From the sequence record PV764601.1: DNA of 64,000 nt; one strand, written 5' to 3'. Numbering within the stretch: the first letter of the stretch is position 1; each line of letters starts with the position of its first letter. The notes beneath the pieces are model-generated. The model was not told where the DNA came from, made no database searches, and saw only the letters and a program-made list of their open reading frames with translations. Positions 8,356 through 59,006 of this stretch are shown here, one piece after another. The position numbers were made by a program, and so were the translations under genes.

Positions 8356-8860
8356 CCTCAGCCTCCATTTCCTGTTTCAACAGGCGGTAGATATTGGCGT
8401 CGGGGTTAGCACGTACCAAGCGTGCGAGGTCTTCGTTGTAACAGCAGCGGTACTTGGTGACTTCCTTGCCAAGCCATTCCGGCAAGGCAAACTCTTCGTC
8501 TTCGCTTTTGAGTTCAAGCTCGACCATGACAAAGCCTTGCAGGGGCCCGTGGAAAACGTCAACCTCAAAGGTGTGACCACCATAGGGGACAAGGTGACGG
8601 GTCTTGCTAACGATGAGGCTGCACATGTTCATCAGTGCGTCTGCGTCTTCGGCAGGGATTCGGTATTCAAATTCCTGCCGTGACACGCCTGCGTTTCTTG
8701 ACTTGATGCACACCTGTGCACCCTTGTCTCCGTTACGCACCCGAACAGTCGCGTCGGCAGACATTGCCAAGTAGCCCTGCACGATAGAGTAGTGCATAGT
8801 GGATTGCTTCTCCCATTCCTGGGATTTCACAAACCACTTGCGTTCGATTTCAACGGCCAT
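8345..8860 (-). CDS. CYTH-domain (adenylate cyclase / triphosphatase-like) protein
   Basis: MAVEIERKW, QGYL, VRVR, EFEY, FEVDVF and VELELKSEDE motifs; start moved. Confidence 0.9.
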   Translation of the reverse strand: MAVEIERKWFVKSQEWEKQSTMHYSIVQGYLAMSADATVRVRNGDKGAQVCIKSRNAGVSRQEFEYRIPAEDADALMNMCSLIVSKTRHLVPYGGHTFEVDVFHGPLQGFVMVELELKSEDEEFALPEWLGKEVTKYRCCYNEDLARLVRANPDANIYRLLKQEMEAEDGR

Positions 8861-8880
8861 GAAGACTCCAATAATCGAGG

Positions 8881-8914
8881 GTGCCATTTTGGCACCGTTG
8901 CCATTTTGGCACCC
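8881..8914. promoter_or_regulatory. Two tandem TGCCA-N3-TGGCA palindromic boxes upstream of the CYTH gene
   Basis: gtgccattttggcacc gttgccattttggcaccc, intergenic. Confidence 0.7.
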
Positions 8915-8921
8915 TATGCAA

Positions 8922-9440
8922 TCAGGGCGTCTTGGCGGTAAGGTCGGTGGTGAAGATGACAGCGTAAGAGTCTGCCAGATCAACGGGATTCAGATCGCGT
9001 GGGGCAATCTTGCGGCGTGCGTTGCGTGGATAGTGAGGGTACTCCCACCAGCATTCTGAGCGCAGCGCACGTGCTACGACAAATGTGCTCTCCGGGTGGA
9101 GCTTCTTGAGTGCCTTCGCCGACACCACTGCGAATCGCGCCAGTGAATACTCGACTGTCGGCGGAGTGAGGTTGCCCGGATCGCGGCGCAGAACAACGTA
9201 GCGGCCTTTGGATGGGTAGGTCAGAATCAGCCGTGTGTTGGCCGGCATCTTCTTTTCGCGTGTCAGGAACGGAGCGTCCGCCGGGTAGGTCTTGTGACCT
9301 CGCTTCTGATACCACTCACGCAGTTCTTGTGCACACACTTGAAACAGCTTGCTGCTCAAGGTCGGGCCAACATTGTTGAAGCCCATATCATCTTTCAGTT
9401 CTTCTACTGCGGGCAAGGTGCCCGTCATCGGATCGATCAT
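8922..9440 (-). CDS. Hypothetical protein
   Basis: Coupled ORF. Confidence 0.75.
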   Translation of the reverse strand: MIDPMTGTLPAVEELKDDMGFNNVGPTLSSKLFQVCAQELREWYQKRGHKTYPADAPFLTREKKMPANTRLILTYPSKGRYVVLRRDPGNLTPPTVEYSLARFAVVSAKALKKLHPESTFVVARALRSECWWEYPHYPRNARRKIAPRDLNPVDLADSYAVIFTTDLTAKTP

Positions 9441-11225: not shown

Positions 11226-11455
11226 TCCGGGGAGATTGTGTTGGGGTCTACACCGCCGTAGTGCACAGCACCACGCACGTAGTAGAGCATTTCAGTGAAG
11301 CCGACCTTGCCCTTGCATTCAGTGCACGTGTACTTCTCCAACGGCGAACGTTTCTCACGTTCGATCTTCGGCCACTTGTGGCCCTTGCACGCTTGCAGTC
11401 GGTCTAGGTTCTCACGCACTTCGCGCATGATTTCCTGTACGTCGATCTTGCTCAT
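11210..11455 (-). CDS. Small Zn-finger-like protein
   Basis: ACKGH and CTEC motifs; start moved to MSKID. Confidence 0.6.
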   Translation of the reverse strand: MSKIDVQEIMREVRENLDRLQACKGHKWPKIEREKRSPLEKYTCTECKGKVGFTEMLYYVRGAVHYGGVDPNTISPEWPFK

Positions 11456-11871
11456 ACCGTGGCCTCGGAATGTAGGTAGTCGGCGATCTTGCCTGCCTTG
11501 AACACGCACACTTGTTTCTTAATCGGGAGATTCTTGCCCTTGTGCCTGCCTTGGCGAACAACCATCGGAACCATCGCAAGCGCAAAGGTGAAGTAGTCTT
11601 CTGCCACGATCAGATGGCCTGTCCCGGTTGCAGTACCGTCGCCATTGCTGACCACGTTAATAGCGCGCAGGTAGGACTCTGCGTTGAGGTACTTGGAATG
11701 CTTCTCAATATCCTCGGGATCGTCGCTGGGGAAGATGCCACGCTTGCCGTTGAATTCCAGAATGTGAGTGAAGCTACCGTTCGCTTCCTTTACCAATCGC
11801 CACACAATCTGGCGACCGTTCATTGCTCGGTAGTCGTTGTAACTCAGTCCTACGCCGTTTTCAATTCCCAT
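11452..11871 (-). CDS. Hypothetical protein
   Basis: Start moved to MGIEN; coupled. Confidence 0.65.
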   Translation of the reverse strand: MGIENGVGLSYNDYRAMNGRQIVWRLVKEANGSFTHILEFNGKRGIFPSDDPEDIEKHSKYLNAESYLRAINVVSNGDGTATGTGHLIVAEDYFTFALAMVPMVVRQGRHKGKNLPIKKQVCVFKAGKIADYLHSEATV

Positions 11872-12187
11872 TGCGATCCCTCTTAGCTTGGAGCGTGATT
11901 GCATCGAGCAGTGCAAGATGCGCAGGCTTGTACCTTCCGTTGTATGTCCGAGGCGGTTGCCAGAAAATACACAGCAGGTAGTTGGACGCTTCGGCCATTG
12001 TAGTAGCATAGGCTTCCACAGGAGTCGCAGCGCTGAACACGAAAGAAGGGCAGTCCTTTGGGTGGTACCCGTTAGTTGGTTTCCATGTGGCCTTCCATTT
12101 GCCGTCCTCTTGGGAGAGGTGAATCTTGGTGAGCCACTTTGTACTGCTACTGATTAGCATAGGTCCGCAGCCGCCTATATATTGCAT
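11861..12187 (-). CDS. Hypothetical protein
   Basis: Start moved to MQYIG. Confidence 0.6.
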   Translation of the reverse strand: MQYIGGCGPMLISSSTKWLTKIHLSQEDGKWKATWKPTNGYHPKDCPSFVFSAATPVEAYATTMAEASNYLLCIFWQPPRTYNGRYKPAHLALLDAITLQAKRDRNGN

Positions 12188-12230
12188 GGTATGTCCCTCA
12201 ATGGAATGGGGCCCGAAGGCCCCCTTTCGA

Positions 12231-12686
12231 TTACTTGCCTCCCCAAGAGTAGAAGCAAACCTCGCCATGCTGGATGGCAACTTGGGTCAGAATCTTGGTG
12301 ACCTTGATTTCGCGTTCGTTCACGTCGATGCCGCCCGAAGCGTCGCGCGTCAGCTTGGCGTAGAAGCGGTCCATATAGGACCCGACGCCGTGGCCAACTT
12401 CCTCTTCCATAGCAGCGAAGCCAAGGTGCGTGGTGAACGCGAGCAGCGGAGACACCGAGAGACGATTGCGCAGGCGCTCGGAAGCAATGCGACGGCCTTC
12501 CACCTTGTTGTAACGATCCCGGTGATCACACAGGGCCAGTGCTACGTTGGCGAACAGGTGGGAGACGCCGGTCGGGTCCTTGGTGGTCCACAGTTCGTAG
12601 GCCACAGTGATGCCGCCGAAGTGTTCACCCGTTTCTTGCAGGTACGGGATTACCGGGGAGCGCAGGTGGATATAGCGAATGGTCAT
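12231..12686 (-). CDS. Hypothetical phage protein
   Basis: ORF with phage-typical spacing. Confidence 0.7.
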   Translation of the reverse strand: MTIRYIHLRSPVIPYLQETGEHFGGITVAYELWTTKDPTGVSHLFANVALALCDHRDRYNKVEGRRIASERLRNRLSVSPLLAFTTHLGFAAMEEEVGHGVGSYMDRFYAKLTRDASGGIDVNEREIKVTKILTQVAIQHGEVCFYSWGGK

Positions 12687-46928: not shown

Positions 46929-47489
46929 CTAAGTACCCGACGCCTTCTCTTCCGCTTCTGTTAGGTATACTCGGCGTCGAACCGTGTTGCGTCTGCTGAA
47001 TTCCGCTGTACGATATGACAGGCGCATAGCAATGGAACGCCATACGTCATCGCCTAGATCGTACTCTTTAGTCCGCCTAACTGAGCGCAGCAACCCTGTC
47101 TTCATTGACAGGACCAATACGCCACAGCCTTCGGGAAACGGATACTTGTCCTTCATTTTCTTCCACACCGTTTCCGTGGTTACGATCCACAGACGATGGC
47201 AGTATCCACAATAGTTGTGCAGCTTCTTGTCAGCACGTAGATCGCTGACGCTGGACTTTATCTCGATTGCGGCGTACTTGCCTTTCAAGGTGTTGCAGAA
47301 TAGGTCCGCGCGGTAGTGGCCCTGTCCACCTCGCCGCGCCCTACCATTTAGACCAAACTCCCGATGGACGGCCCATCCTCTTTTGACCATGTGCCCGATG
47401 GCTGCACGGTACAGCTTCTCCCGCACAGTCACCCGACTGTTAGCTTTGACTACTGCCATGATAGATCGCAGAGTTTGCGCCGTGCTCAC
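46929..47489 (-). CDS. MmcB-like PD-(D/E)XK nuclease
   Basis: RADL...AIEIKSSVSDLRADKKL..Y..YC..LW. Confidence 0.8.
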   Translation of the reverse strand: MSTAQTLRSIMAVVKANSRVTVREKLYRAAIGHMVKRGWAVHREFGLNGRARRGGQGHYRADLFCNTLKGKYAAIEIKSSVSDLRADKKLHNYCGYCHRLWIVTTETVWKKMKDKYPFPEGCGVLVLSMKTGLLRSVRRTKEYDLGDDVWRSIAMRLSYRTAEFSRRNTVRRRVYLTEAEEKASGT

Positions 47490-47904
47490 TTACTTCTACC
47501 GATACCAACCGGCAGCGAGGACTGAACCCTGCATCCTTTAGCCACTGTTCGGTCACAGCGTACACCATTTCGGCGAAGCGCTCGCAACCCGCGTATGGGA
47601 ATACGACAAGGCGCAGGACACCACGGCGGTCTGCTTCCCTGAACCATTCCAGTTCCGGGTCGTCTTCGGCGATGATGGTTGTGTGGTCGAAGTTGTCCGC
47701 GAGGATTTGCTTGAGGTCGTCAAGGCCCCCGAAGTCCACTACCCAATTGCGTTCGTCCAGCTGGTCTGTCTCGAAGACAAACTTGAAGCCAAGGGCGTAC
47801 CCGTGAACCAATCGGCAATGGCTGTCGTGAGCACGCCACTGTCGGAAGGCACAGCTAAAGCCTCGTTCATGGCCCCATGTTTTCGTGCTACGGTACACGC
47901 TCAC
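47440..47904 (-). CDS. queD: 6-carboxy-tetrahydropterin synthase (QueD/PTPS family)
   Basis: HCRLVHGY, WVVDFGGL, FDHT, GCE.FA, EHGANSA. Confidence 0.88.
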   Translation of the reverse strand: MSVYRSTKTWGHERGFSCAFRQWRAHDSHCRLVHGYALGFKFVFETDQLDERNWVVDFGGLDDLKQILADNFDHTTIIAEDDPELEWFREADRRGVLRLVVFPYAGCERFAEMVYAVTEQWLKDAGFSPRCRLVSVEVSEHGANSAIYHGSSQS

Positions 47905-48218
47905 TTCTCCATCAATTGAATGCGGTTTAGGTGTTTCAGGTCAGAGCCGGGAACCAATCGTGCCTTAGACTCACTCACCTTGGCGAATGCCTTGATGATC
48001 TTCGGTTCAAGCTGTCGGCGCAGGAACGCGCTTAGGCTTGTCGCGTTGATGGGGTCGAGCACGATAGTGTTCCCGATCTGTGAATAGAGGTACGTGACAG
48101 TGAGGTTCAGCGTCAGCACTTCTGCTTCGGACTTGTGCTTAGTGCTCACTGTGATGGACAGGCTACCGTCAGGCTGCCCGAACCTTCCACGCAGTTTGTC
48201 GATAGCCTGTTGCATCAT
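47901..48218 (-). CDS. Hypothetical protein
   Basis: Coupled ORF. Confidence 0.7.
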   Translation of the reverse strand: MMQQAIDKLRGRFGQPDGSLSITVSTKHKSEAEVLTLNLTVTYLYSQIGNTIVLDPINATSLSAFLRRQLEPKIIKAFAKVSESKARLVPGSDLKHLNRIQLMEK

Positions 48219-49687
48219 TATTCCTCGTCCTCCTGTTCCTCAGCGGCACCCGCCTTGGAATGCTGGTACATGAGTTCCTTAGCCTTGCCCGACTTGATCT
48301 GCTTGAGACAGAACGCCTTTATGTCGAACGGCTTGAGCTTCATCTTACGGAAGTGTTCCTTGCGCTCGGCGCCCTTGAGCAGGATCATCTTCTTGAGGTC
48401 AACCATGTTGGCCTTGAACTCTTGACCCTTGTTCAATTTGACCGAGAACTTCTTCTGGCTGCCGGACAACTGGCCCGTCATCTTGAGGAAGTACCACACG
48501 TCGAACGCGGGACAGAAGCCATGCGCGATACCGTCTTCGTCAGCCACCCAAATGCGAGCGAAGCACTCATGGCCCGGAACGGCCAGCTTGTTCTTCTTCG
48601 CAACCATGTGGATGTACCGATACTTGTCAGTACCTTCGCCAGTGATCGAAGTCTCTTCATGCACAGGACCGCTCGCACCACTCAGGCCGATCTGCGGGGT
48701 GCTAAGAGCACGCGGCGTTTGCCAGATACGAATGTCCGACTGGAAGCGCAGCGCCTGACCACCGGGTTCATAGCGAGGATCACCCTGCGCCATCGGCTTC
48801 TCACGAAGCTGGTTCACACCCATTAGGATCGCGTTCTTACGACGCAGCTTACCCTTGATCTTCGACAGGTTAGCGGCCAGCAGACGTGCAACCGCTGCGA
48901 GGCCCGCTGCCGGATCATCATCGTCCATGTTCTCAGGGACCAAGCTAACCCAGCTATCCAACACGATCACGCACTGCGGTGCGTTGTTCGGTGCCTGTAC
49001 GTAGAACTTGTTGTGCTTGGAGAAGAAACTCTTGTTGTACCGATCACCAACGATCCTACGGTTCTCCTTGGTGTTCTCGTACACGTAGTACCACTGCTGA
49101 TCCATCAACTCCATGTCCGGCAGACGACGCAGGATCATCGCCAGTGCATTGAGCAGTAGTTCACCGCGCTCTTCCGGGTAGTAGCGGATGCGAGGACGTA
49201 CAGCCCACGACCCGTCCTTGGCGCGCTGGCCAAAGATTTCCTCTACCGGAATTCGATTCTTCATCATGTTGCTCATGTAGACTGCATCGGTCGAACCCTC
49301 GGGGTCGGCAGACACAATCAGACCGGGCTGTTCTTCTTCCGGCAGGTCGAGCAAGGTGGCGAGGAAGTTAGAGCAGTTGGTGGACTTGGCAGACTGTTCA
49401 CCACCGACGTTCGTTACCATTGCACCATACACGTAGCCACCACCCAGCAGCATGTCCTGACAGAGCAGTCCCGAGTGCATGGCGTAGTCGAAACGATTCT
49501 GCATGTTGCTAGACAGCTTGGACTTCTTTTCCACGACCGTGATAACGTCGTCGTAGTTAGGACGCCAAACCTTTACCGCAGGTGCAGAAGCCTTGAGTTT
49601 AGCTGGGGCTTCCTTCTTCTTGGAGGCAGCCTTGGCCGCTCCCTTCTTTACCGATTTCTTTGCAGGCTTGACAGCCTTCTTTGCCAT
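48218..49687 (-). CDS. RecA/UvsX-like recombinase with H1-like basic N-tail
   Basis: GGEQSAKST Walker A variant, VLDS Walker B, NQLREK, PGGQALRFQSDIR; start moved to MAKKA. Confidence 0.88.
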   Translation of the reverse strand: MAKKAVKPAKKSVKKGAAKAASKKKEAPAKLKASAPAVKVWRPNYDDVITVVEKKSKLSSNMQNRFDYAMHSGLLCQDMLLGGGYVYGAMVTNVGGEQSAKSTNCSNFLATLLDLPEEEQPGLIVSADPEGSTDAVYMSNMMKNRIPVEEIFGQRAKDGSWAVRPRIRYYPEERGELLLNALAMILRRLPDMELMDQQWYYVYENTKENRRIVGDRYNKSFFSKHNKFYVQAPNNAPQCVIVLDSWVSLVPENMDDDDPAAGLAAVARLLAANLSKIKGKLRRKNAILMGVNQLREKPMAQGDPRYEPGGQALRFQSDIRIWQTPRALSTPQIGLSGASGPVHEETSITGEGTDKYRYIHMVAKKNKLAVPGHECFARIWVADEDGIAHGFCPAFDVWYFLKMTGQLSGSQKKFSVKLNKGQEFKANMVDLKKMILLKGAERKEHFRKMKLKPFDIKAFCLKQIKSGKAKELMYQHSKAGAAEEQEDEE

Positions 49688-49710
49688 ACTGGATTCCGTC
49701 GAAAATACCG

Positions 49711-49746
49711 AAAAATAAGGGAGGACGTGGGGTAGCACGTCCTCCC
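49711..49746 (-). terminator. Intrinsic terminator after the SSB gene
   Basis: Minus strand GGGAGGACGTG-CTACCC-CACGTCCTCCC-TTATTTTT. Confidence 0.9.
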
Positions 49747-49853
49747 AAATCTGATGGTCCCAGGATGCCTCAAAACCCCTAATCCTACCGACTTTTGGGC
49801 GTTTTGAGGCAAGGATTTTCCTGTGTTTTTAGGCCAATCAGGGACTGCCGAGG

Positions 49854-51468
<1,615 letters not shown>

Positions 51469-51491
51469 AGTTGGGTCTCCTGTTGAATCAC

Positions 51492-52508
51492 TTATTGTTT
51501 ACAAGAATGTCGTTTGGCGTCGATGCGTACCACTTCATGCGGAAGCAGCAGTTCCTCAATGCCCAACTCTTGGCGCGCAAAACCATCCGGGTCAGCAATC
51601 TTTGCCAGCAGGCGTACCCGCTGTGCCCGATCTTCCTCGGTGAGTTTCTCAAACTCATCTGTGCTATCCGGTTGGTTGAACACTTCCTCAGTCTCAAAGT
51701 CCGAAGAAATATTCACCAGTTGTAGATCGCCCCTAGCCACAGCCCGCTTTGCATGCGGAGACAGGGAGTATGCGATCCCGTACTCATGAGACTGTGTAGG
51801 CGAATGCTTGGCATTCGTGATCCAGTTCTGAGTATAAGGAGCGAGCGTTCCCTTATCGGGGTTCATCTTGTTCACCGCTTTGTTCACCGCCAGCACAAAG
51901 TTTTGCGTTACGTCTTCAAGGTCAGTGCGTGGATTCTCCCGGTTGAACTTCACCGCTTGCATCATGGCGTGCCGCATGAACCGTTCAAGAATCTGATTCC
52001 TGAATTTGGTAGCTTCGGTTTCCCATGACTTGACGCGTTGAAGCACGCGACCTAGGTTCTTACCCGCACCGACTAGCTGCTCAATTCTCTCCATAGCTAT
52101 CCGACGCGACGGCAGGCGCTTCTGAGCGTAAAGCACCTCCAATTTCGGATAGTCCTTGGCCAACGTGCAGAAGCGCTTGATGATGAAGAAGAGGATGTTT
52201 CTCTCCAGCTTCATTCGGCGCACCAAGCGCACCTTATCCTGAGCCTTGTCGGCCAACAAGTACAGGTTCATGAGGTGCAGAACCTTGGGCTTGTCAACCG
52301 AACTAATCTTGCGTCCTGTGTTTGTTGCGTACCAGCAAAGCATCGCTGGCATGTTTCTATCAAAGAACTCCGTGTGCCTGATGATAGGCTCCACGGCCAG
52401 CATGAGAAGCTGGTCCAATGCAGTCATCATCTGACTATCATTCCAGCGTCCCTGCATCGTTTCCTTGACTGTCTTTGTAGCTTGGATAGATGCAGAGTTG
52501 CGACTCAT
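51492..52508 (-). CDS. Phage sigma-70-family factor (region 2 recognisable)
   Basis: EDVTQNFVLAVNKAVNKMNPDKGTLAPYTQNWI resembles region 2.2-2.4. Confidence 0.75.
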   Translation of the reverse strand: MSRNSASIQATKTVKETMQGRWNDSQMMTALDQLLMLAVEPIIRHTEFFDRNMPAMLCWYATNTGRKISSVDKPKVLHLMNLYLLADKAQDKVRLVRRMKLERNILFFIIKRFCTLAKDYPKLEVLYAQKRLPSRRIAMERIEQLVGAGKNLGRVLQRVKSWETEATKFRNQILERFMRHAMMQAVKFNRENPRTDLEDVTQNFVLAVNKAVNKMNPDKGTLAPYTQNWITNAKHSPTQSHEYGIAYSLSPHAKRAVARGDLQLVNISSDFETEEVFNQPDSTDEFEKLTEEDRAQRVRLLAKIADPDGFARQELGIEELLLPHEVVRIDAKRHSCKQ

Positions 52509-52909
52509 AGCTTCTTGGATCGTATTGCTAAGGCGATGCGCAGAGTGTGGTGGCAGAGCATCATGACTCCGCCCGGATTGCGAATGTTAGGCATGCTGCC
52601 GTCAGAGTACCGAATGCTACTGGCACCCTGCTTAGTCAGCAGCACTTCCTGTCCGTAGAAGACTTGGAATCCGCAGTCACACCACACCTTTACGTAGCCC
52701 TCACCGAGTAGAGTGTCAGGCTCTACGCACTGAATCTCTACCCGATGCTTGTCATGCGCGCCCTTGTCGCTGACGCGCTGTACTACGGCTCTGATGGTGC
52801 GAAGGCCCGAACGGCTCAGTCCGGCGCTGGCATTCAAGATGCGAGTCTCTCGTGCCTTCTCGTACTGAACCTTCGGGCAAAGCGCCATCAAGTCTGTGAT
52901 GGTCTTCAC
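52505..52909 (-). CDS. SWIM-like Zn-finger protein
   Basis: WCDC...LCHH. Confidence 0.65.
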   Translation of the reverse strand: MKTITDLMALCPKVQYEKARETRILNASAGLSRSGLRTIRAVVQRVSDKGAHDKHRVEIQCVEPDTLLGEGYVKVWCDCGFQVFYGQEVLLTKQGASSIRYSDGSMPNIRNPGGVMMLCHHTLRIALAIRSKKL

Positions 52910-54618
52910 TTCTTTTTCTTCTTGACCTTCTGCTTACCGGGGCGTTTGCTTCGAGTCACACCCATCGCCTTGTTACCGATCTTGGTCGCGCTGGCGATGT
53001 TCTTCTTCTTGCGGCCTGCCTTGTCCAACTTGACAGGTTCGACAACCTCGGGCTCAGGAGCCGCGCCTTCCTCAGCTTCCAGCTTCACCTTCTTTTTCTT
53101 CGGTGGGGCAGGCTTGCGTTCAGGGGTAGAGGACAACTTGAGCCTACCAGCCTGGGCGTCTTCATACTTCTTGAGGATCGCCAAGTCTCGGGTGGGATCA
53201 GCCGTCTCTTCCATTTCGATGCCCGAGAACAGAGTCTTGGTAGCACCTGTGTCACTGTCCGTCTTCGGCAAGTAGAACGCGAATTCCTTTCGCGCATCAG
53301 CCAAGCCCGAGGTCTTGACCATATCAACAAAGTCCAACGTGTGGAAGAACTCTTGCAGCTGCTTGCGCTTGGCCTTGGAGTTACCGAACAAGGTGCGCAA
53401 AGCATCCTTTGCTTCGCCGACAGGCACACCCGCCACCCGATCGTACAGGGACTTCTGGAACATTTGGATCGAGAACAGATTGTGGTACACCAGCAGCAGC
53501 GTGATCGTGTTGCTATTGACCATGCTTAGAACGTCGGTGTACTTCACCACTGAGCAGATAGGGCAGGTGCAGTTGAGCAGCTGGTTGCCGCCCGGATGGT
53601 AGCCACCCGCGTCAGCGTAGAACAGCACTTCCGGCAGCGCTTCGGTGCCGTTGGGCTTGTAATACTTGCGCCCATTAGCTGCCTGTAGGTGCGAGCTACT
53701 ATCCGAGGTGATGAGGGGCGCAATGTCGCTACCACTCAAACGCATCAAGGGAATCGTCTGCGTGATGTTGGCGATACCCAGCGCGTGATAGTGCTTGTAT
53801 CGCTGCCCACCTGTCATGATGGCGCACAGGCGGTCGATACTCGACAGGATGGAACCGAAGTAGATACCACCGACTGCAAGGCGATCAATGTCAGGGCGTT
53901 CAACGATCTTGCGGAAGGTGTCCATTTCCTTGCCGACCGCACCGTGGATGATGTTCAGCAGTTCCAGACCCGGCCGCTTGTTGTCCATCATGATGCGTGT
54001 GTTCTCAGCCTGCACCTTGGCGGACCGAGTGTAGATTTCAAGGCCGTTGGACGCCAGCGGCGTATCCAGCACCATGCCCCAATCCACATTGTCGTTGTAC
54101 CACGTGACCAGTTCCTTCGGGTCGATGTAGTCCACCGTACCCTTGACCAACTGGAAGCCACCGGAGTCTGCGATGATCTTGGTATGCTGGTCGATCCCGT
54201 AGCGGAAGTCCTTGCGACGGATGCCCGAAGAGCGTTTCTCCTTACCGATGTAGCTGGTGTAGTTCGTCATCACGCAACCATATTCAAGGTCGGCGGACGA
54301 ATGTTCCCAGAACGGCGAGAAGTTGTAGAACTCGTCGTAGGTGCCCTGCATGGGCCGGTAGATATGGGCACGCTGACCATTGGCTACGATCAGCAGTTCC
54401 CGGTCAGGACACTTGATACGCATGAAGTCGCTATCATGATCCACCACAGTTACGTGGCTCGGACCTCGACCATAGCGCACATAGATATGCACGCCTCCGC
54501 GCTTTGAATACTCACTTGCCGCAGGAACAAAGTTGTAGCTGGCTCCGCTTCGGAAGTCAGAGGCGGGAGTCCACCCTCCCCACGGTGCCCCTCCCGTTTT
54601 CTTCTTGCTCATTCTCAA
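52906..54618 (-). CDS. TGT/DpdA-family 7-deazaguanine transglycosylase
   Basis: DSGGFQ, MVLD, IHG, AVGG, HALG, SDSSS, CTCPIC...HN Zn site. Confidence 0.85.
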   Translation of the reverse strand: MRMSKKKTGGAPWGGWTPASDFRSGASYNFVPAASEYSKRGGVHIYVRYGRGPSHVTVVDHDSDFMRIKCPDRELLIVANGQRAHIYRPMQGTYDEFYNFSPFWEHSSADLEYGCVMTNYTSYIGKEKRSSGIRRKDFRYGIDQHTKIIADSGGFQLVKGTVDYIDPKELVTWYNDNVDWGMVLDTPLASNGLEIYTRSAKVQAENTRIMMDNKRPGLELLNIIHGAVGKEMDTFRKIVERPDIDRLAVGGIYFGSILSSIDRLCAIMTGGQRYKHYHALGIANITQTIPLMRLSGSDIAPLITSDSSSHLQAANGRKYYKPNGTEALPEVLFYADAGGYHPGGNQLLNCTCPICSVVKYTDVLSMVNSNTITLLLVYHNLFSIQMFQKSLYDRVAGVPVGEAKDALRTLFGNSKAKRKQLQEFFHTLDFVDMVKTSGLADARKEFAFYLPKTDSDTGATKTLFSGIEMEETADPTRDLAILKKYEDAQAGRLKLSSTPERKPAPPKKKKVKLEAEEGAAPEPEVVEPVKLDKAGRKKKNIASATKIGNKAMGVTRSKRPGKQKVKKKKK

Positions 54619-55807: not shown

Positions 55808-56395
55808 TCAGCGTTTATTTACAGGATTGATCTTTACGAGGATTCCCTGCAACGCCTGCCCCAACTTGTCTTGGAGGTTCTCCAGAGGCAAGCCCGAGGG
55901 TGCGGAAATTTGGTAGTCGATGTAGTTGCTAAGGTCTTGGATTTCGACCCGATGATTGTGGAGGCCGTCCACAATGGGCTGGTCTTCGCGCTGCACTTCG
56001 ATGACGGTAAAGCCAGCACGTCGCAACACCATAGCCTCGATGGGGAAGCGCAGGTCCGTCACTACGATGTTGTCAGAGTGATAGTGGACCGATGCTTCCT
56101 TAGTCAGGGCGCGCGCAAAGAAGTCCTGCCCGAAACGTGGCTTGATGTAGTTCTCCGCCATATCGCGCCAAATGTCGCGCTTGCTCAGGTAGTCCCCTGC
56201 GATGTTACGGATCAGAGGACTGTCCTTGTCCTCCTCATCGTTAGCATCCCATCCGAACATTTCTGCGGCAGCCATCTTGACTGGAGTAGCGAACCGAAGG
56301 CGTACAAAGTCGAAGCGATCAACGAGAATATCTGCGCTGGTATCCTTGCCCGAGTGCGGCAAGCCGCAGAGTGCGATGCGGATGGGATTAGTCAC
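55808..56395 (-). CDS. Deoxynucleoside monophosphate kinase
   Basis: GLPHSGKDT, RFATPVK, VVTDLRFPIE. Confidence 0.9.
   Translation of the reverse strand: MTNPIRIALCGLPHSGKDTSADILVDRFDFVRLRFATPVKMAAAEMFGWDANDEEDKDSPLIRNIAGDYLSKRDIWRDMAENYIKPRFGQDFFARALTKEASVHYHSDNIVVTDLRFPIEAMVLRRAGFTVIEVQREDQPIVDGLHNHRVEIQDLSNYIDYQISAPSGLPLENLQDKLGQALQGILVKINPVNKR
55816..55825 (-). promoter_or_regulatory. Putative phage promoter CCTGTAAATA
   Basis: Exact motif at the end of the kinase gene, 37 nt before the next start. Confidence 0.6.
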
Positions 56396-57790: not shown

Positions 57791-58074
57791 GGCGGCCCGC
57801 TCAACAAAGTTGTGTGGTCAGGGAAGGTCATCCTCGGGAGGATTTCCCGAGCACGCTCTACGTTCTGCTGATGACTGATACCGAGCCAGAAGTCAGGGGT
57901 GGTTCCCCAATATCGGGCGAAGGCAGCGGCCATCAAGGGGTCAATCATGCACCAGCCCTTCCCGATGTTGGCATGGATAGCCTGCTCGGGAATGCCAATG
58001 CGCTGTGCGAACTGAGACAGGGTGATTCCTGCCTCAGCCAGTCGGGTGTCCAGTTCAGTGAGAACTGCCGTCAT
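57760..58074 (-). CDS. HigA-like XRE HTH protein (orphan antitoxin-like)
   Basis: ITLSQFAQRIGIP...MAAAFARYWGTTPDFWLG. Confidence 0.75.
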   Translation of the reverse strand: MTAVLTELDTRLAEAGITLSQFAQRIGIPEQAIHANIGKGWCMIDPLMAAAFARYWGTTPDFWLGISHQQNVERAREILPRMTFPDHTTLLSGPPCDFVDIKIG

Positions 58075-59006
58075 ACCGCAACGTCCGCCTTGATTGCAGG
58101 GTGCGACTTGTAGCCGATGATTTCCACGTCATCAAACTTGTAATCCCACAGGTTGTCCCGAGCGGTCTTGATGTTGATGAAGGGATAGGGATACGGCTCG
58201 CGGGTCAGCTGCATCTTGGCCAGAGACAGATGATTCGAGTACAGGTGGAAGTCAGTCACCGACAGCACAAGCTCACCCGGCTGCACACCGATAGTCTTGG
58301 CGACCAACGCATTCAGCAGCGCATACTGTGCGATGTTGAAGGGCGTTCCGAGGAAGGCGTCATTCGACCTCATGAAGAAGTGGCAGTTCATTCGACCGTT
58401 GCGCACGATGAACTGGAACAGGATGTGGCACGGCTGCAACTTCATTTCCGGCAAGTCCTGCGGATTCCACGCGCTGATGACCAGTCGGCGGCTGTACGGG
58501 TTGCGCTTCATTTCTGCCAGCACTTCCGTGATTTGATCGACACCAGCGAAATCACGCCACTGCTTGCCGTACACAGGACCGAGGTCGCCATTCTCGTCTG
58601 CCCACTCATCCCAAATCGTGACCTTGTTGTCGGTAAGGTACTTGATGTTGGTCAGGCCCTTGAGCATCCAAATCAGTTCATGGAACACCGACTTGAAGTG
58701 CACCTTCTTCGTGGTGACCAGTGGGTACACCGGCAGGCTCTGACCGAAGTAAGGACTGCTACTGTCAAGCACCGTATGCGGGTGCATGTTGAATCGCATC
58801 TGATGGCAGAACTGCGACAGGGTGCCGGTGCCAGTACGATCAGGGACAGGATCACCGTGCCCGAAGATGCTAGCGAGGCCGCGCTCGTATTCGCCAAAGG
58901 GACTGCGAACGGCAACGCATTGATCGTATCGGAAGGTGTCACGTTCGTGACGAATCTGCTCCTCAATGGGAGCGAACCACTTGGGGTAGGTCAGGTCGAG
59001 AGTCAT
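58071..59006 (-). CDS. thyA: Thymidylate synthase
   Basis: DRTGTGT, TTKK, GPVYG.QWR, SRR, PCH, RSND..G.PFNIA. Confidence 0.97.
   Translation of the reverse strand: MTLDLTYPKWFAPIEEQIRHERDTFRYDQCVAVRSPFGEYERGLASIFGHGDPVPDRTGTGTLSQFCHQMRFNMHPHTVLDSSSPYFGQSLPVYPLVTTKKVHFKSVFHELIWMLKGLTNIKYLTDNKVTIWDEWADENGDLGPVYGKQWRDFAGVDQITEVLAEMKRNPYSRRLVISAWNPQDLPEMKLQPCHILFQFIVRNGRMNCHFFMRSNDAFLGTPFNIAQYALLNALVAKTIGVQPGELVLSVTDFHLYSNHLSLAKMQLTREPYPYPFINIKTARDNLWDYKFDDVEIIGYKSHPAIKADVAV

What the first reader, a model, noticed from the sequence alone, without database searches (positions are those of the whole stretch)
47440..54618. DpdA/TGT-like transglycosylase plus QueD: 7-deazaguanine DNA modification in a jumbo-type phage
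The 570-aa protein keeps the TGT catalytic aspartates (DSGGFQ, VLD, SD) and the Zn site, but has His in place of the usual Gln (IHG versus VQG), an N-terminal extension of about 140 aa and a basic C-tail. QueD lies about 5 kb away among replication genes. Established: phage dpdA with folE/queD/queE/queC installs preQ0, G+, preQ1 or ADG in DNA and protects against restriction. FolE, QueE and QueC are not in this window, so the product is unknown. The atypical pocket and unlinked layout may indicate a distinct subfamily or base. A tRNA target is not excluded.
Basis: partly seen in the sequence, partly recalled or inferred. Interest (0 to 1): 0.72.

Follow-up and report, generated by a model that had tools for sequence, protein, structure and literature searches.

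The report
Jumbo-phage DpdA deazaguanine DNA modification
This 228-kb Xanthomonas phage carries an unannotated enzyme of the DpdA kind that most likely swaps guanines in the phage's own DNA for a 7-deazaguanine base, probably archaeosine, made by four other phage genes; this is a known anti-restriction device, seen here in a little-studied branch of the enzyme family.

Summary
The window is the last 64 kb of Xanthomonas phage PhiXhv-12 (PV764601.1). The ORF at 52906-54618(-) is annotated 'hypothetical protein'. It is a real member of the tRNA-guanine transglycosylase (TGT) superfamily. It keeps all three active-site Asp, the stacking Phe, the base-reading His and the CxCx2Cx23H zinc site. These are invariant or nearly so in 46 relatives.

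The His is not atypical. It matches His181 of the solved bacterial DNA-guanine transglycosylase DpdA.

QueD lies at 47440-47898(-). The 'missing' genes are elsewhere in the genome:
- FolE
- a phage-type QueE
- a Gat-QueC fusion, 34% identical to that of the dG+ phages of the 9g group

The full published gene set for 2'-deoxyarchaeosine (dG+) in DNA is therefore present, though scattered.

The enzyme belongs to a jumbo-phage clade (Motura, BCSR5, NCTB, Vibrio GR11A, P. putida phages). This clade is distinct from nt-1-type DpdA2 and from DpdA3, but the literature already reads it as a DNA transglycosylase.

Verdict: a new member of a known kind; no chemistry has been measured.

Side lead: a GT4-like glycosyltransferase family specifically linked to dpd genes.

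The parts
52906..54618 (-). dpdA-like gene (DNA-guanine transglycosylase candidate). 570 aa from TTG at 54618; probable true start is ATG at 54612 (568 aa, GenBank XYR92962.1 'hypothetical protein'). Stop codon at 52906-52908.
   Evidence: Family of 82 and 504 relatives. Profile against PDB: ArcTGT 3.5e-10, DpdA 7UI4 1.4e-3. AF2 pLDDT 82, and all top Foldseek PDB hits are TGTs.
54259..54540 (-). Clade-specific N-terminal beta-rich domain (residues about 27-120). A33, Y46, P71, D72, R73, M117 and N119 are invariant or nearly so. About 55 residues longer than the N-terminus of ArcTGT.
   Evidence: Shared with BCSR5 and Motura. Not aligned in nt-1 DpdA2 or PA5oct DpdA3.
53434..54258 (-). TGT-type TIM-barrel catalytic core (residues about 121-395). 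DSGGFQ 54151-54168 (D151 general acid/base, F155 stacking). D185 at 54064-54066. H225 at 53944-53946. D306 (nucleophile) at 53701-53703.
   Evidence: Roles taken from bDpdA (PMC10164549).
53482..53571 (-). Structural zinc site C350-x-C352-x2-C355-x23-H379.
   Evidence: Invariant in 46/46. Aligns with the Zn motif of ArcTGT 1IQ8. bDpdA has CXCX2CX22H.
53149..53433 (-). C-terminal helical region (residues about 396-490), conserved within the clade only.
52909..53148 (-). Disordered Lys/Arg-rich tail (residues about 491-570). Inferred non-specific nucleic-acid contact.
   Evidence: 18 K/R against 4 D/E in the last 50 residues; family medians 14 against 5
47440..47898 (-). queD-like gene (6-carboxytetrahydropterin synthase candidate, XYR92954.1, 152 aa; the ORF listing extends it to a GTG at 47904). 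Keeps the catalytic Cys and CxxxHG, but has Tyr where QueD has the second His, and Phe where the comparator QueDs place an upstream His.
   Evidence: 52% identical to BCSR5 QueD. Not a DpdL (no LxxxHRHxF).
47901..52909 (-). Intervening co-directional genes (context, not part of the pathway): small ORF 47901-48218; UvsX/RecA-like recombinase 48218-49687; SSB-like 50041-51468; sigma factor 51492-52508; 134-aa ORF 52505-52909, which overlaps the dpdA stop by 4 nt.
   Evidence: The same order (DpdA, small ORF, sigma..., RecA) occurs in Vibrio phage GR11A and in most of the 14 IMG/VR loci.

Best explanation
The 568-aa protein is a DNA-guanine transglycosylase of the DpdA family.

Inferred mechanism, taken from TGT and bDpdA:
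1. Asp306 attacks C1' of a target deoxyguanosine in double-stranded phage DNA.
2. Guanine leaves, helped by Asp151.
3. A free 7-deazaguanine base is bound between Phe155 and the Asp185/His225 pair, and is joined to the sugar.

Supply of the base, all from phage genes:
- FolE (record 8706-9386): GTP to dihydroneopterin triphosphate
- QueD (window 47440-47898): to 6-carboxytetrahydropterin
- QueE (record 11391-12290): to 7-carboxy-7-deazaguanine
- Gat-QueC (record 120910-122433): to preQ0 and on to the amidine G+

The expected end product is 2'-deoxyarchaeosine (dG+) at a fraction of the G positions, possibly with some dPreQ0. Its expected role is protection of the phage DNA from host restriction.

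Shown here: fold, catalytic and metal residues, gene set, family relations, synteny.

Inferred: the DNA substrate, the base inserted, its level and sequence context, and the protective role.
For: Enzyme family and fold:
- TGT-superfamily membership. NCBIfam TIGR00432 E=7.9e-7 and tgt_general E=9e-4 for the single sequence. 29 of 46 relatives hit PF01702. The family profile hits ArcTGT at 3.5e-10, DpdA 7UI4 at 1.4e-3 and bacterial TGT at 0.015.
- AF2 model pLDDT 82, pTM 0.81. The top 50 Foldseek PDB hits are all TGT or ArcTGT, E about 1e-10.

Pocket and metal site:
- D151, F155, D185, H225 and D306 match bDpdA D95, F99, D130, H181 and D256. The zinc site is present.
- All 14 clade members not linked to DpdL share F155/H225.

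Pathway genes in the genome:
- FolE: PF01227 E=1.3e-27.
- Gat-QueC: GATase_7 plus QueC, PF06508 E=2.3e-49.
- QueE: weak match to TIGR03365, but full-length tblastn matches to the QueE of nt-1, CP220 and HVTV-1.
- Gat-QueC is 34% identical over its full length, with the N-terminal Cys kept, to the Nonagvirus 'dPreQ0 and archaeosine synthase'.

Literature:
- FolE + QueD + QueE + Gat-QueC + DpdA give dG+ in 9g, and the same genes do so in E. coli (PMC6884629).
- DpdA is the signature of 7-deazaguanine in phage DNA (PMC10516641).

Relatives:
- Motura clusters queD-like, queC, asnB-like, TGT, queE and folE. It was read as a DNA-incorporating system (PMC7824862).
- BCSR5 QRE00062.1 matches the family profile over its full length (99.8%, E=1.8e-30). 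It is listed as a DpdA.
- All 20 phage records of the clade that I could check carry QueE.

Context and architecture:
- The gene sits in the replication/recombination module in this phage and in most of the related loci examined.
- The basic tail is a family trait.
- No PUA or other tRNA-binding domain was detected.
Against: - No chemical or sequencing-signal data exist for this phage. The genome paper does not mention DNA modification or restriction.
- By sequence the family profile is closer to the tRNA enzyme ArcTGT than to bDpdA. Archaea use ArcTGT together with Gat-QueC to make G+ in tRNA.
- No member of this clade has been assayed.
- DpdA3 and DpdA4 could not be made to work in E. coli.
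- The QueD-like protein lacks two of the usual metal-binding His.
- The QueE match to curated models is weak.
- The genes are scattered, so co-regulation is not shown.
- Gat-QueC sits in an operon-like run with a glycosyltransferase, a PIG-L deacetylase and other genes. The final base may therefore not be plain G+.
Confidence: 0.75

Rival explanations
1. Same enzyme and same DNA target, but a different final base. Either preQ0 stays as such, or G+/preQ0 is further decorated (for example glycosylated and then deacetylated or acylated) by the genes that flank Gat-QueC.
For: - Gat-QueC lies in a co-directional, overlapping run. Its members are a Leu/Phe-tRNA-protein-transferase-like protein, a 545-aa GNAT/FemAB-like protein, three unknown ORFs, a PIG-L deacetylase, a GT4-like glycosyltransferase and a GFO/IDH/MocA oxidoreductase.
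- The glycosyltransferase's only tblastn relatives among 50,697 phage records are its own group, PA5oct-like phages, ACP17 and Phosso.
- In PA5oct, ACP17, BCSR5 and five metagenomic contigs it lies beside dpdA and dpdL.
- 9g dpdA expressed without gat-queC gave dPreQ0.
Against: - No decorated 7-deazaguanine of this type is known; a literature search gave none.
- In the other phages the glycosyltransferase goes with DpdL, whose product 7-deazaguanine has no side chain to glycosylate.
- The other neighbours of Gat-QueC have no homologues in the other dpd loci compared (loci L002-L017; eight-locus clustering).
- The run could serve an unrelated purpose.
Confidence: 0.15
2. The enzyme is a tRNA-guanine transglycosylase. 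It would act on G34 of GUN-anticodon tRNAs or on G15, as ArcTGT does. The phage pathway would then tune translation rather than protect DNA.
For: - The best solved sequence match is ArcTGT.
- ArcTGT plus Gat-QueC is an archaeal tRNA G+ route.
- The phage's single tRNA is tRNA-Asn(GTT), one of the four queuosine-family tRNAs.
Against: - The protein has His, not the Gln of the tRNA enzymes (Gln from my background knowledge), at the base-reading position.
- It has no PUA or C-terminal tRNA-binding domains.
- There is no QueF, QueA or QueG for the bacterial Q route.
- Every phage TGT-like enzyme tested so far acts on DNA, and 9g DpdA did not complement an E. coli tgt mutant.
- The gene lies in the replication module.
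Confidence: 0.07
3. The TGT-like protein is a catalytically idle or structural relic. The FolE/QueD/QueE/QueC genes would only feed host folate or queuosine pools.
For: Some phages carry preQ0 genes without any recognised DpdA (2019 table). The genes are scattered in this genome.
Against: - Every catalytic and zinc residue is invariant across 46 relatives that are only about 24-64% identical. That indicates purifying selection on catalysis.
- The phages that 'lacked' DpdA later turned out to have one. NCTB, listed without DpdA in 2019, carries a member of this very clade.
Confidence: 0.03

Closest known systems
dG+ system of Enterobacteria phage 9g and other Nonagvirus phages (DpdA1 + FolE, QueD, QueE, Gat-QueC)
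   Same: Same five functions. Gat-QueC is an orthologue (34% identity over the full length, N-terminal Cys and QueC Cys cluster kept). The same predicted product, dG+ (PMC6884629).
   Different: The transglycosylase belongs to another clade: the family profile against Nonagvirus DpdA1 gives only 9.5% hhalign probability, and the protein is 568 aa against 317 aa. The genes are scattered over a 228-kb myovirus genome instead of one 6-kb cluster.
Jumbo-phage transglycosylases of Achromobacter phage Motura and Burkholderia phage BCSR5 (the latter listed as DpdA2, QRE00062.1, in Hutinet et al. 2023 data DS1)
   Same: Same family, including the N-terminal domain, His225, the zinc site and the helical C-terminus. 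Profile matches: Motura E=1.6e-58; BCSR5 99.8%, E=1.8e-30, 421 columns. Foldseek TM about 0.75-0.77. Motura was already interpreted as inserting a deazaguanine into DNA (PMC7824862).
   Different: Only 25-27% identical to the PhiXhv-12 protein. Motura and BCSR5 cluster their pathway genes. BCSR5 ends its pathway in DpdL with no QueC. Motura has separate QueC and AsnB-like genes. PhiXhv-12 has the Gat-QueC fusion.
DpdA2 of Vibrio phage nt-1 (YP_008125322), shown to insert preQ0 into DNA
   Same: Related barrel core: profile-profile 98.7%, E=3.9e-16 over 177 columns, running from the DSGG motif to the DSS motif. Foldseek E=3.2e-10.
   Different: No BLAST-level similarity: 22.7 bits, and the tblastn record sets do not overlap. 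DpdA2 has no conserved Cys column, so no zinc site. It has Gln in 21 and His in 6 of 27 at the His225 position. It lacks the N-terminal domain.
DpdA3 (PA5oct QCG76197.1; CP220; phiST), linked to complete G replacement
   Same: Profile-profile 98.5%, E=2.4e-15 over 315 columns. Similar length (about 520-540 aa). Also found in jumbo phages.
   Different: DpdA3 has Ser in 20 of 20 at the His225 position and DAAS in place of TSDSS. It has no CxCxxC...H site. The homologue sets do not overlap.
Bacterial DpdA (Salmonella Montevideo, PDB 7UI4)
   Same: Identical set of pocket residues (Asp, Phe, Asp, His, Asp) and a CxCx2Cx22-23H zinc site. Substrate preQ0, target DNA.
   Different: Distant in sequence (E=1.4e-3; NF041059 E=0.85; no PADLOC hit). 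bDpdA needs the DpdB ATPase and belongs to a restriction-modification island. I did not search for a DpdB-like partner here.
Archaeosine tRNA-guanine transglycosylase (ArcTGT, PDB 1IQ8/1J2B)
   Same: Best solved sequence match (E=3.5e-10). The DSGxFQ, LD and zinc regions align. Uses preQ0.
   Different: ArcTGT acts on tRNA G15 and carries C-terminal tRNA-binding domains that are absent here. Here the base-reading residue is His. The C-terminus is helical with a basic disordered tail.

Membership tests
TGT superfamily (PF01702-type TIM-barrel transglycosylases) | TGT-type (beta/alpha)8 barrel fold | tested here: met
   AF2 model pLDDT 82, pTM 0.81. Foldseek PDB: the top 50 hits are all TGT/ArcTGT, E 1e-10 to 4e-8, probability 1.00.
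TGT superfamily (PF01702-type TIM-barrel transglycosylases) | Score above the curated family thresholds | tested here: not met
   The single sequence gives PF01702 E=0.071 (12.6 bits against a cut-off of 26.3), and TIGR00449 18.2 bits against 47.6. Membership rests on profile and fold evidence: 29/46 relatives hit PF01702 at E<=0.01, and the family profile hits ArcTGT at 3.5e-10.
TGT superfamily (PF01702-type TIM-barrel transglycosylases) | Three active-site aspartates (general acid/base, base-binding, nucleophile) | tested here: met
   D151, D185 and D306 are invariant in 46/46. They align with the corresponding motifs of 1IQ8 and 7UI4.
TGT superfamily (PF01702-type TIM-barrel transglycosylases) | Structural zinc site CxCxxC...H | tested here: met
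   C350, C352, C355 and H379 are invariant.
DpdA (DNA-guanine transglycosylases) | His at the position that reads the Watson-Crick edge (bDpdA His181; the 'conserved histidine' of 9g DpdA) | tested here: met
   H225 aligns with the HG of 7UI4. His in 43/46, Gln in 3/46. Role from PMC10164549.
DpdA (DNA-guanine transglycosylases) | Encoded together with preQ0-pathway genes in the same genome | tested here: met
DpdA (DNA-guanine transglycosylases) | Exchanges guanine in DNA (not tRNA) for a 7-deazaguanine | not testable with these tools
   No biochemical or nucleoside data exist for this phage or for any member of its clade.
DpdA1 (9g/CAjan type) | Detectable homology to DpdA1 beyond the shared superfamily motifs | tested here: not met
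   hhalign of the family profile against Nonagvirus DpdA1: probability 9.5%. HMM search E>10. BLASTP found no alignment at E<=10 in one direction and 17.7 bits in the other.
DpdA2 (nt-1 type) | Sequence-level membership in the nt-1 group | tested here: inconclusive
   Profile-profile 98.7% over the barrel core only, but 22.7 bits by BLASTP. The tblastn and homologue sets do not overlap. The zinc site and N-terminal domain are absent from DpdA2. Yet clade member BCSR5 is listed under DpdA2 in the 2023 data table.
DpdA3 (phiST/CP220/PA5oct type) | Sequence-level membership and its pocket (Ser at the His position, DAAS motif) | tested here: not met
   Related at profile level (98.5%), but the pocket differs (S 20/20). 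There is no zinc motif, and the homologue sets do not overlap.
DpdA4 (archaeal virus type, DUF6610) | Homology to HVTV1_69 | tested here: not met
   hhalign probability 2%.
Gat-QueC (archaeosine/preQ0 synthase fusion) | Class-II glutamine amidotransferase domain with N-terminal Cys, fused to QueC | tested here: met
   GATase_7 plus QueC PF06508 E=2.3e-49. The first seven residues, including the N-terminal Cys, are identical to those of Nonagvirus Gat-QueC; 34% identity over the full length.
QueD (6-carboxytetrahydropterin synthase) | Signature CxxxHGH with both His binding zinc | tested here: not met
   The window protein has CxxxHGY, and Phe where canonical QueDs have an upstream His. Fold-family membership holds (PF01242 E=2e-16). 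The same variant occurs in BCSR5, where it is listed as QueD, and in Motura.

The most novel reading that the evidence does not exclude
The PhiXhv-12 enzyme may represent a separate, ancestral-looking DpdA subfamily of jumbo phages. It retains the zinc site, is of the His type, has its own N-terminal domain, and is built into the replication module. In this phage its product may be processed beyond G+ by the GT4-like glycosyltransferase, PIG-L deacetylase and acyl/aminoacyl-transferase genes that flank Gat-QueC. That would give a sugar- or aminoacyl-decorated 7-deazaguanine not yet seen in DNA. More generally, the GT4-like family may be an unrecognised third component of dpdA/dpdL loci.
Probability: 0.15. 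Interest if true: 0.7.

Novelty: new member of a known kind. Interest (0 to 1): 0.4.

Why it matters
It gives a function to an unannotated 568-aa protein and its roughly 120-500 metagenomic relatives. [quoted passage not shown]

That matters in practice:
- Such DNA resists many restriction enzymes.
- It can bias sequencing and cloning.
- It may contribute to the broad host range reported for these jumbo phages.

For the 7-deazaguanine field, three points follow:
- The DpdA2 label currently covers at least two groups that differ in metal site and pocket.
- Phage NCTB, listed without any DpdA in 2019, has one.
- A specific glycosyltransferase family travels with dpdA and dpdL. It is a candidate for the 'unknown enzyme' invoked when dpdA plus dpdL failed to give dDG in E. 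coli.

Tried and rejected
- Direct Pfam scan at E<=0.01: no family. PADLOC: no hit. The bDpdA model NF041059 gave E=0.85. Single-sequence family scans therefore under-call this protein.
- The search for related loci with the 46-sequence alignment failed because it had no conserved stretch. A 12-sequence subset worked.
- I looked for DpdA3 next to QueE in Campylobacter phage CP220 with HMM and hhalign scans and found nothing in that 17-kb stretch. I used PA5oct DpdA3 instead, located from the 2023 data table.
- The PMC copy of the 2023 paper holds no supplements. The bioRxiv copy does.
- Is the small ORF downstream of dpdA a conserved partner, like DpdB? It is conserved only between PhiXhv-12 and Vibrio GR11A (34% identity) and not in Motura, BCSR5 or the metagenomic loci. 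Rejected as a general partner.
- Could the window 'QueD' be a DpdL decarboxylase? Rejected. It keeps the Cys, is 52% identical to BCSR5 QueD and shows no similarity to BCSR5 or PA5oct DpdL. No DpdL exists in the genome.
- 'Thiamine biosynthesis protein' as a hidden QueC: rejected; it is ThiF-like.
- The 563-aa plus-strand ORF at 49795-51486 has no family hit. It lies antisense to the SSB-like gene and is treated as spurious.
- Literature searches for DpdA5/6 or for a glycosylated 7-deazaguanine found nothing.
- I did not make a separate model of the N-terminal domain and did not build a tree with cellular TGTs, because no comparator sequences were at hand.

Full report
WHAT THE WINDOW IS. Bases 47440-54618 are 100% identical to Xanthomonas phage PhiXhv-12 (PV764601.1, 227,648 bp, host X. 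hortorum pv. vitians). The window is the last 64 kb of that record, so window position equals record position minus 163,648. PhiXhv-15, PhiXhv-16, Xanthomonas phage Ep026 and 'Erwinia' phage Ep032 carry the same genes at 96.8-99.6% DNA identity. The paper describing these phages says nothing about DNA modification, queuosine genes or restriction. In GenBank the 568-aa protein is 'hypothetical protein' XYR92962.1, and QueD is annotated as QueD-like.

- The ORF at 52906-54618(-) gives 570 aa from a TTG. The ATG at 54612 is the likelier start: it lies 2 nt after the upstream stop, with GAAGGA about 8 nt upstream. My residue numbers are GenBank numbers plus 2.
- DSGGFQ (151-156), LD (Asp185), IHG (His225), TSD (Asp306) and C350-x-C352-x2-C355-x23-H379 are all present.
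- In 46 homologues of 24-64% identity these residues are invariant. The exceptions are F155 (F39, L5, Y2) and H225 (H43, Q3).
- The basic tail is real (18 K/R against 4 D/E in the last 50 residues). It is a compositional trait of the family (medians 14 against 5) and is predicted to be disordered.
- The N-terminal 'extension' is about 55 residues relative to ArcTGT, not 140. Residue 120 aligns with ArcTGT residue 65.
- QueD is at 47440-47898(-), 5.0 kb away. A UvsX/RecA-like recombinase, an SSB-like protein and a sigma factor lie between.

WHAT THE PROTEIN IS.
- Single-sequence family scans nearly miss it: PF01702 E=0.071; TIGR00432 E=7.9e-7; bDpdA model E=0.85; PADLOC none.
- The protein has a large family: 82 relatives by word-indexed search, and 504 / 247 / 119 cluster representatives at E<=1e-3 / 1e-10 / 1e-30. 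Many lie on contigs of 100-295 kb.
- 29 of 46 members hit PF01702.
- The family profile hits ArcTGT (3.5e-10), the solved DNA-guanine transglycosylase DpdA 7UI4 (1.4e-3) and bacterial TGTs (0.015).
- An AlphaFold model built on the alignment is confident (pLDDT 82, pTM 0.81). Its best 50 PDB neighbours are all TGT or ArcTGT (E about 1e-10).
- TGT-superfamily membership is therefore secure, even though the curated single-sequence thresholds are not reached.

THE POCKET IS THE DpdA POCKET, NOT AN ODD ONE.
- In the profile alignment to 7UI4, H225-G226 aligns with the HG of bDpdA.
- The structure paper assigns the bDpdA roles as follows: Asp95 general acid/base, Phe99 stacking, Asp130 and His181 reading the Watson-Crick edge, Asp256 nucleophile, and a CXCX2CX22H zinc site (PMC10164549).
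- PhiXhv-12 has D151, F155, D185, H225, D306 and CxCx2Cx23H, which is the same set.
- bDpdA, DpdA1 and DpdA2 enzymes tested so far insert preQ0.

THE REST OF THE PATHWAY IS IN THE GENOME. I read the annotation of the whole record and scanned candidates:
- 'GTP cyclohydrolase' (record 8706-9386, minus strand) is FolE (PF01227 E=1.3e-27).
- 'GTP 3',8-cyclase' (11391-12290, minus strand) matches QueE models only weakly (TIGR03365 E=7.7e-8). It has full-length tblastn matches to the QueE of nt-1, CP220, HVTV-1 and 140 other phage records.
- 'L-glutamine-D-fructose-6-phosphate aminotransferase' (120910-122433, plus strand) is a Gat-QueC fusion (GATase_7 plus QueC PF06508 E=2.3e-49). It is 34% identical end to end to the Nonagvirus 'dPreQ0 and archaeosine synthase', and the N-terminal nucleophile Cys is kept.
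- A whole-genome HMM scan finds one copy each of FolE, QueD, QueE, Gat-QueC and the DpdA-like gene, and no DpdL.
- The 2019 study showed that FolE, QueD, QueE, Gat-QueC and DpdA give dG+ in phage 9g. It also showed that 9g dpdA plus gat-queC are enough to put dG+ into E. coli DNA (PMC6884629).
- The expected product here is therefore dG+. Whether G+ is formed before or after insertion is open even for 9g.
- FolE, QueE, DpdA and QueD are all on the minus strand. If the record ends are joined, they lie within about 29 kb around the portal/terminase region. Only Gat-QueC is far away.

WHERE IT SITS AMONG THE DpdA SUBFAMILIES. I fetched one reference for each subfamily named in the literature:
- DpdA1: Escherichia phage ChristophMerian
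- DpdA2: nt-1 YP_008125322
- DpdA3: PA5oct QCG76197.1
- DpdA4: HVTV1_69

The family profile against these single sequences gives 9.5%, 94.8%, 97.3% and 2% hhalign probability. With profiles on both sides the results are:
- this clade against DpdA2: 98.7% (E=3.9e-16, 177 columns)
- this clade against DpdA3: 98.5% (E=2.4e-15, 315 columns)
- DpdA2 against DpdA3: 96.3%

At BLAST level the groups are closed and do not overlap. The PhiXhv-12 protein finds 21 phage records: its own group, Vibrio GR11A and GR7B, nine P. putida vB_PpuM phages, NCTB, BCSR5, Motura and, weakly, Phosso. nt-1 DpdA2 finds 71 other records.

Column counts separate the groups:
- At the His225 position, this clade has H43/Q3, DpdA2 has Q21/H6, and DpdA3 has S20/20.
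- Conserved Cys columns number three here, none in DpdA2, and two isolated ones in DpdA3.
- The N-terminal domain is shared only within the clade.

The clade is thus a third lineage beside DpdA2 and DpdA3. It has kept the ancestral zinc site and the bDpdA-type pocket.

It is not unknown, however:
- BCSR5 QRE00062.1 matches the family profile over its full length (99.8%, E=1.8e-30), and it is filed under DpdA2 in the 2023 data table.
- Iyer et al. 2021 already described the Motura genes as a deazaguanine synthesis system plus a transglycosylase for incorporation into DNA.
- Conversely, phage NCTB was listed in 2019 with FolE, QueD, QueE and QueC but no DpdA. It has a member of this clade (BFVD rank 2, a 531-aa unnamed entry, may be its protein).

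CONTEXT.
- The order DpdA, small ORF, sigma factor, then (further on) RecA/UvsX recurs in Vibrio phage GR11A, in most of the 14 IMG/VR loci and in metagenomic jumbo contigs. The gene therefore belongs to the replication/recombination module of a whole group of large phages.
- Pathway genes are clustered with it in Motura and BCSR5 and partly in others (FolE or QueD within 10 kb in L025 and L031).
- The pathway ends differ within the clade: Gat-QueC (PhiXhv-12), QueC plus an AsnB-like gene (Motura), QueC (NCTB), and DpdL without QueC (BCSR5 and five metagenomic contigs).
- In DpdL-linked members the pocket changes in 6 of 7 loci (F155 to Leu in 4, H225 to Gln in 2). It changes in 0 of 14 others. 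This fits a change of substrate there and a standard preQ0-type pocket in PhiXhv-12.

HOW IT MOST LIKELY WORKS.
- Shown: a TGT-fold enzyme with an intact double-displacement apparatus and zinc site; a complete phage-encoded route from GTP to preQ0/G+; and embedding in the DNA-metabolism module.
- Inferred: after replication the enzyme binds duplex DNA. The basic tail and perhaps the N-terminal domain help. It flips out a target dG, forms an Asp306-deoxyribose intermediate, releases guanine and installs preQ0 or G+. Gat-QueC supplies or finishes the amidine. The modified DNA resists host restriction.
- My estimates: DNA 7-deazaguanine modification about 0.75-0.8; dG+ as the main species about 0.55.

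RIVALS.
- A different or further decorated base (0.15): see the side lead below.
- A tRNA target (0.07). For it: the closest solved sequence is ArcTGT; archaea pair ArcTGT with Gat-QueC; and the only phage tRNA is tRNA-Asn(GTT). Against it: the His-type pocket, the lack of tRNA-binding domains, the absence of QueF/QueA/QueG, and all precedent from phages.
- An idle relic (0.03): contradicted by invariant catalytic residues.

SIDE LEAD. Two genes after Gat-QueC lies a 367-aa 'glycoside transferase' with no Pfam hit of its own.
- Five of eight members of its family hit PF00534, and the family profile hits the GT4 enzyme WlaC.
- By tblastn it finds only 19 of 50,697 phage records: its own group, 11 PA5oct-like phages, ACP17 (two records) and Phosso.
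- In PA5oct it lies between DpdA3 and DpdL.
- In ACP17 it is YP_009609724.1, between DpdA2 (..723) and DpdL (..725).
- In BCSR5 and in contigs L015, L016, L026, L027 and L029 it lies beside the clade's DpdA and a DpdL.
- All seven GT-bearing loci have DpdL within 3 kb.
- This family is not among the gene columns of the 2023 table. [quoted passage not shown]
- In PhiXhv-12 the same family accompanies Gat-QueC, a PIG-L deacetylase, a GFO/IDH/MocA oxidoreductase, a GNAT/FemAB-like protein and a Leu/Phe-tRNA-transferase-like protein. A GT4 enzyme followed by a PIG-L deacetylase and then an acylation step recalls mycothiol and bacillithiol synthesis (my background knowledge).
- What it does is unexplained. 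It keeps open a small chance of a new decorated base.

CAVEAT ON QueD.
- The window protein is a T-fold PTPS/QueD-family member. Its best solved match is a 6-carboxytetrahydropterin synthase (E=5.7e-5).
- It has CxxxHGY where QueD has CxxxHGH, and Phe where canonical QueDs have an upstream His. According to the 2023 paper, both His of the motif bind zinc.
- Other conserved His lie nearby.
- The variant is shared by BCSR5, where it is listed as QueD, and by Motura, where it lies next to queC. I therefore keep the QueD assignment, with reduced confidence. The host QueD could also serve.

VERDICT. This is a new member of a known kind of system, of moderate interest (0.4). It brings two useful by-products: a cleaner definition of a jumbo-phage DpdA clade, and a dpd-linked glycosyltransferase family.

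No broken genes were met. I used no consensus line printed by the alignment tool as evidence in this report; conservation is given as column counts.

Noticed in passing
PV764601.1 record 123041-124144 (outside the window; locus L004:23041-24144); also L013:4137-5198, L014:5885-6997, L015:8887-9987, L016:12895-13974, L032:3387-4415: A GT4/GT-B-like glycosyltransferase family occurs almost only next to 7-deazaguanine genes. It lies between DpdA and DpdL in ACP17 and PA5oct. It lies beside DpdA and DpdL in BCSR5 and five metagenomic jumbo contigs. It lies beside Gat-QueC in PhiXhv-12. Its tblastn hits are confined to 19 of 50,697 phage records. It is not among the named Dpd genes of the 2023 survey.
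   Followed up: partly
PV764601.1 record 115739-124996 (L004:15739-24996): Gat-QueC sits in a co-directional, overlapping gene run. Its members are a Leu/Phe-tRNA-protein-transferase-like protein, a 545-aa GNAT/FemAB-like protein, three unknown ORFs, a PIG-L deacetylase, the GT4-like protein and a GFO/IDH/MocA oxidoreductase. This may be a decoration pathway or may be unrelated.
   Followed up: partly
window 47440-47898 (-): The QueD-like protein has CxxxHGY instead of the QueD signature CxxxHGH. It also has Phe where canonical QueDs have an upstream zinc-binding His. The same variant occurs in BCSR5 and Motura; two other clade-bearing contigs have the canonical form.
   Followed up: partly
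PV764601.1 record 83850-83925 (L003:33850-33925, -): The phage's only tRNA is tRNA-Asn(GTT), one of the four tRNAs that carry queuosine at position 34 in bacteria.
   Followed up: no
loci L015, L016, L026-L029 against L006, L007, L017-L025, L030, L031: Within the clade the pocket residues change (F155 to Leu, or H225 to Gln) in 6 of 7 DpdL-linked loci and in 0 of 14 others. This is a possible signature of a switch of substrate to 7-deazaguanine. L015 and L028 are the same contig type, so the count of independent cases is smaller.
   Followed up: partly
Phage NCTB LT598654.1 9613-10890: NCTB was tabulated in 2019 with FolE, QueD, QueE and QueC but no DpdA or DpdA2. It encodes a member of this clade (29% identity, E=4e-45).
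   Followed up: yes
window 55808-56395 (-) and 58071-59006 (-): A dNMP-kinase-like protein (PF21448 E=2.6e-11) and a strong thymidylate-synthase-family protein (PF00303 E=4.5e-97) lie just beyond dpdA in the record. I did not test whether the latter is a plain ThyA or a hydroxymethylase.
   Followed up: no
window 49795-51486 (+): A 563-aa ORF runs antisense to the SSB-like gene (50041-51468, minus strand) and has no family hit. The stretch 50001-52000 has the strongest GC skew (-0.20) and AT skew (-0.24) of the window. It is probably a spurious ORF created by the skewed composition.
   Followed up: no
window 52505-52909 (-): The 134-aa ORF that overlaps the dpdA stop by 4 nt is conserved next to the DpdA-like gene in Vibrio phage GR11A (34% identity) but not in more distant relatives. 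It matches only PHROGs of unknown function.
   Followed up: partly
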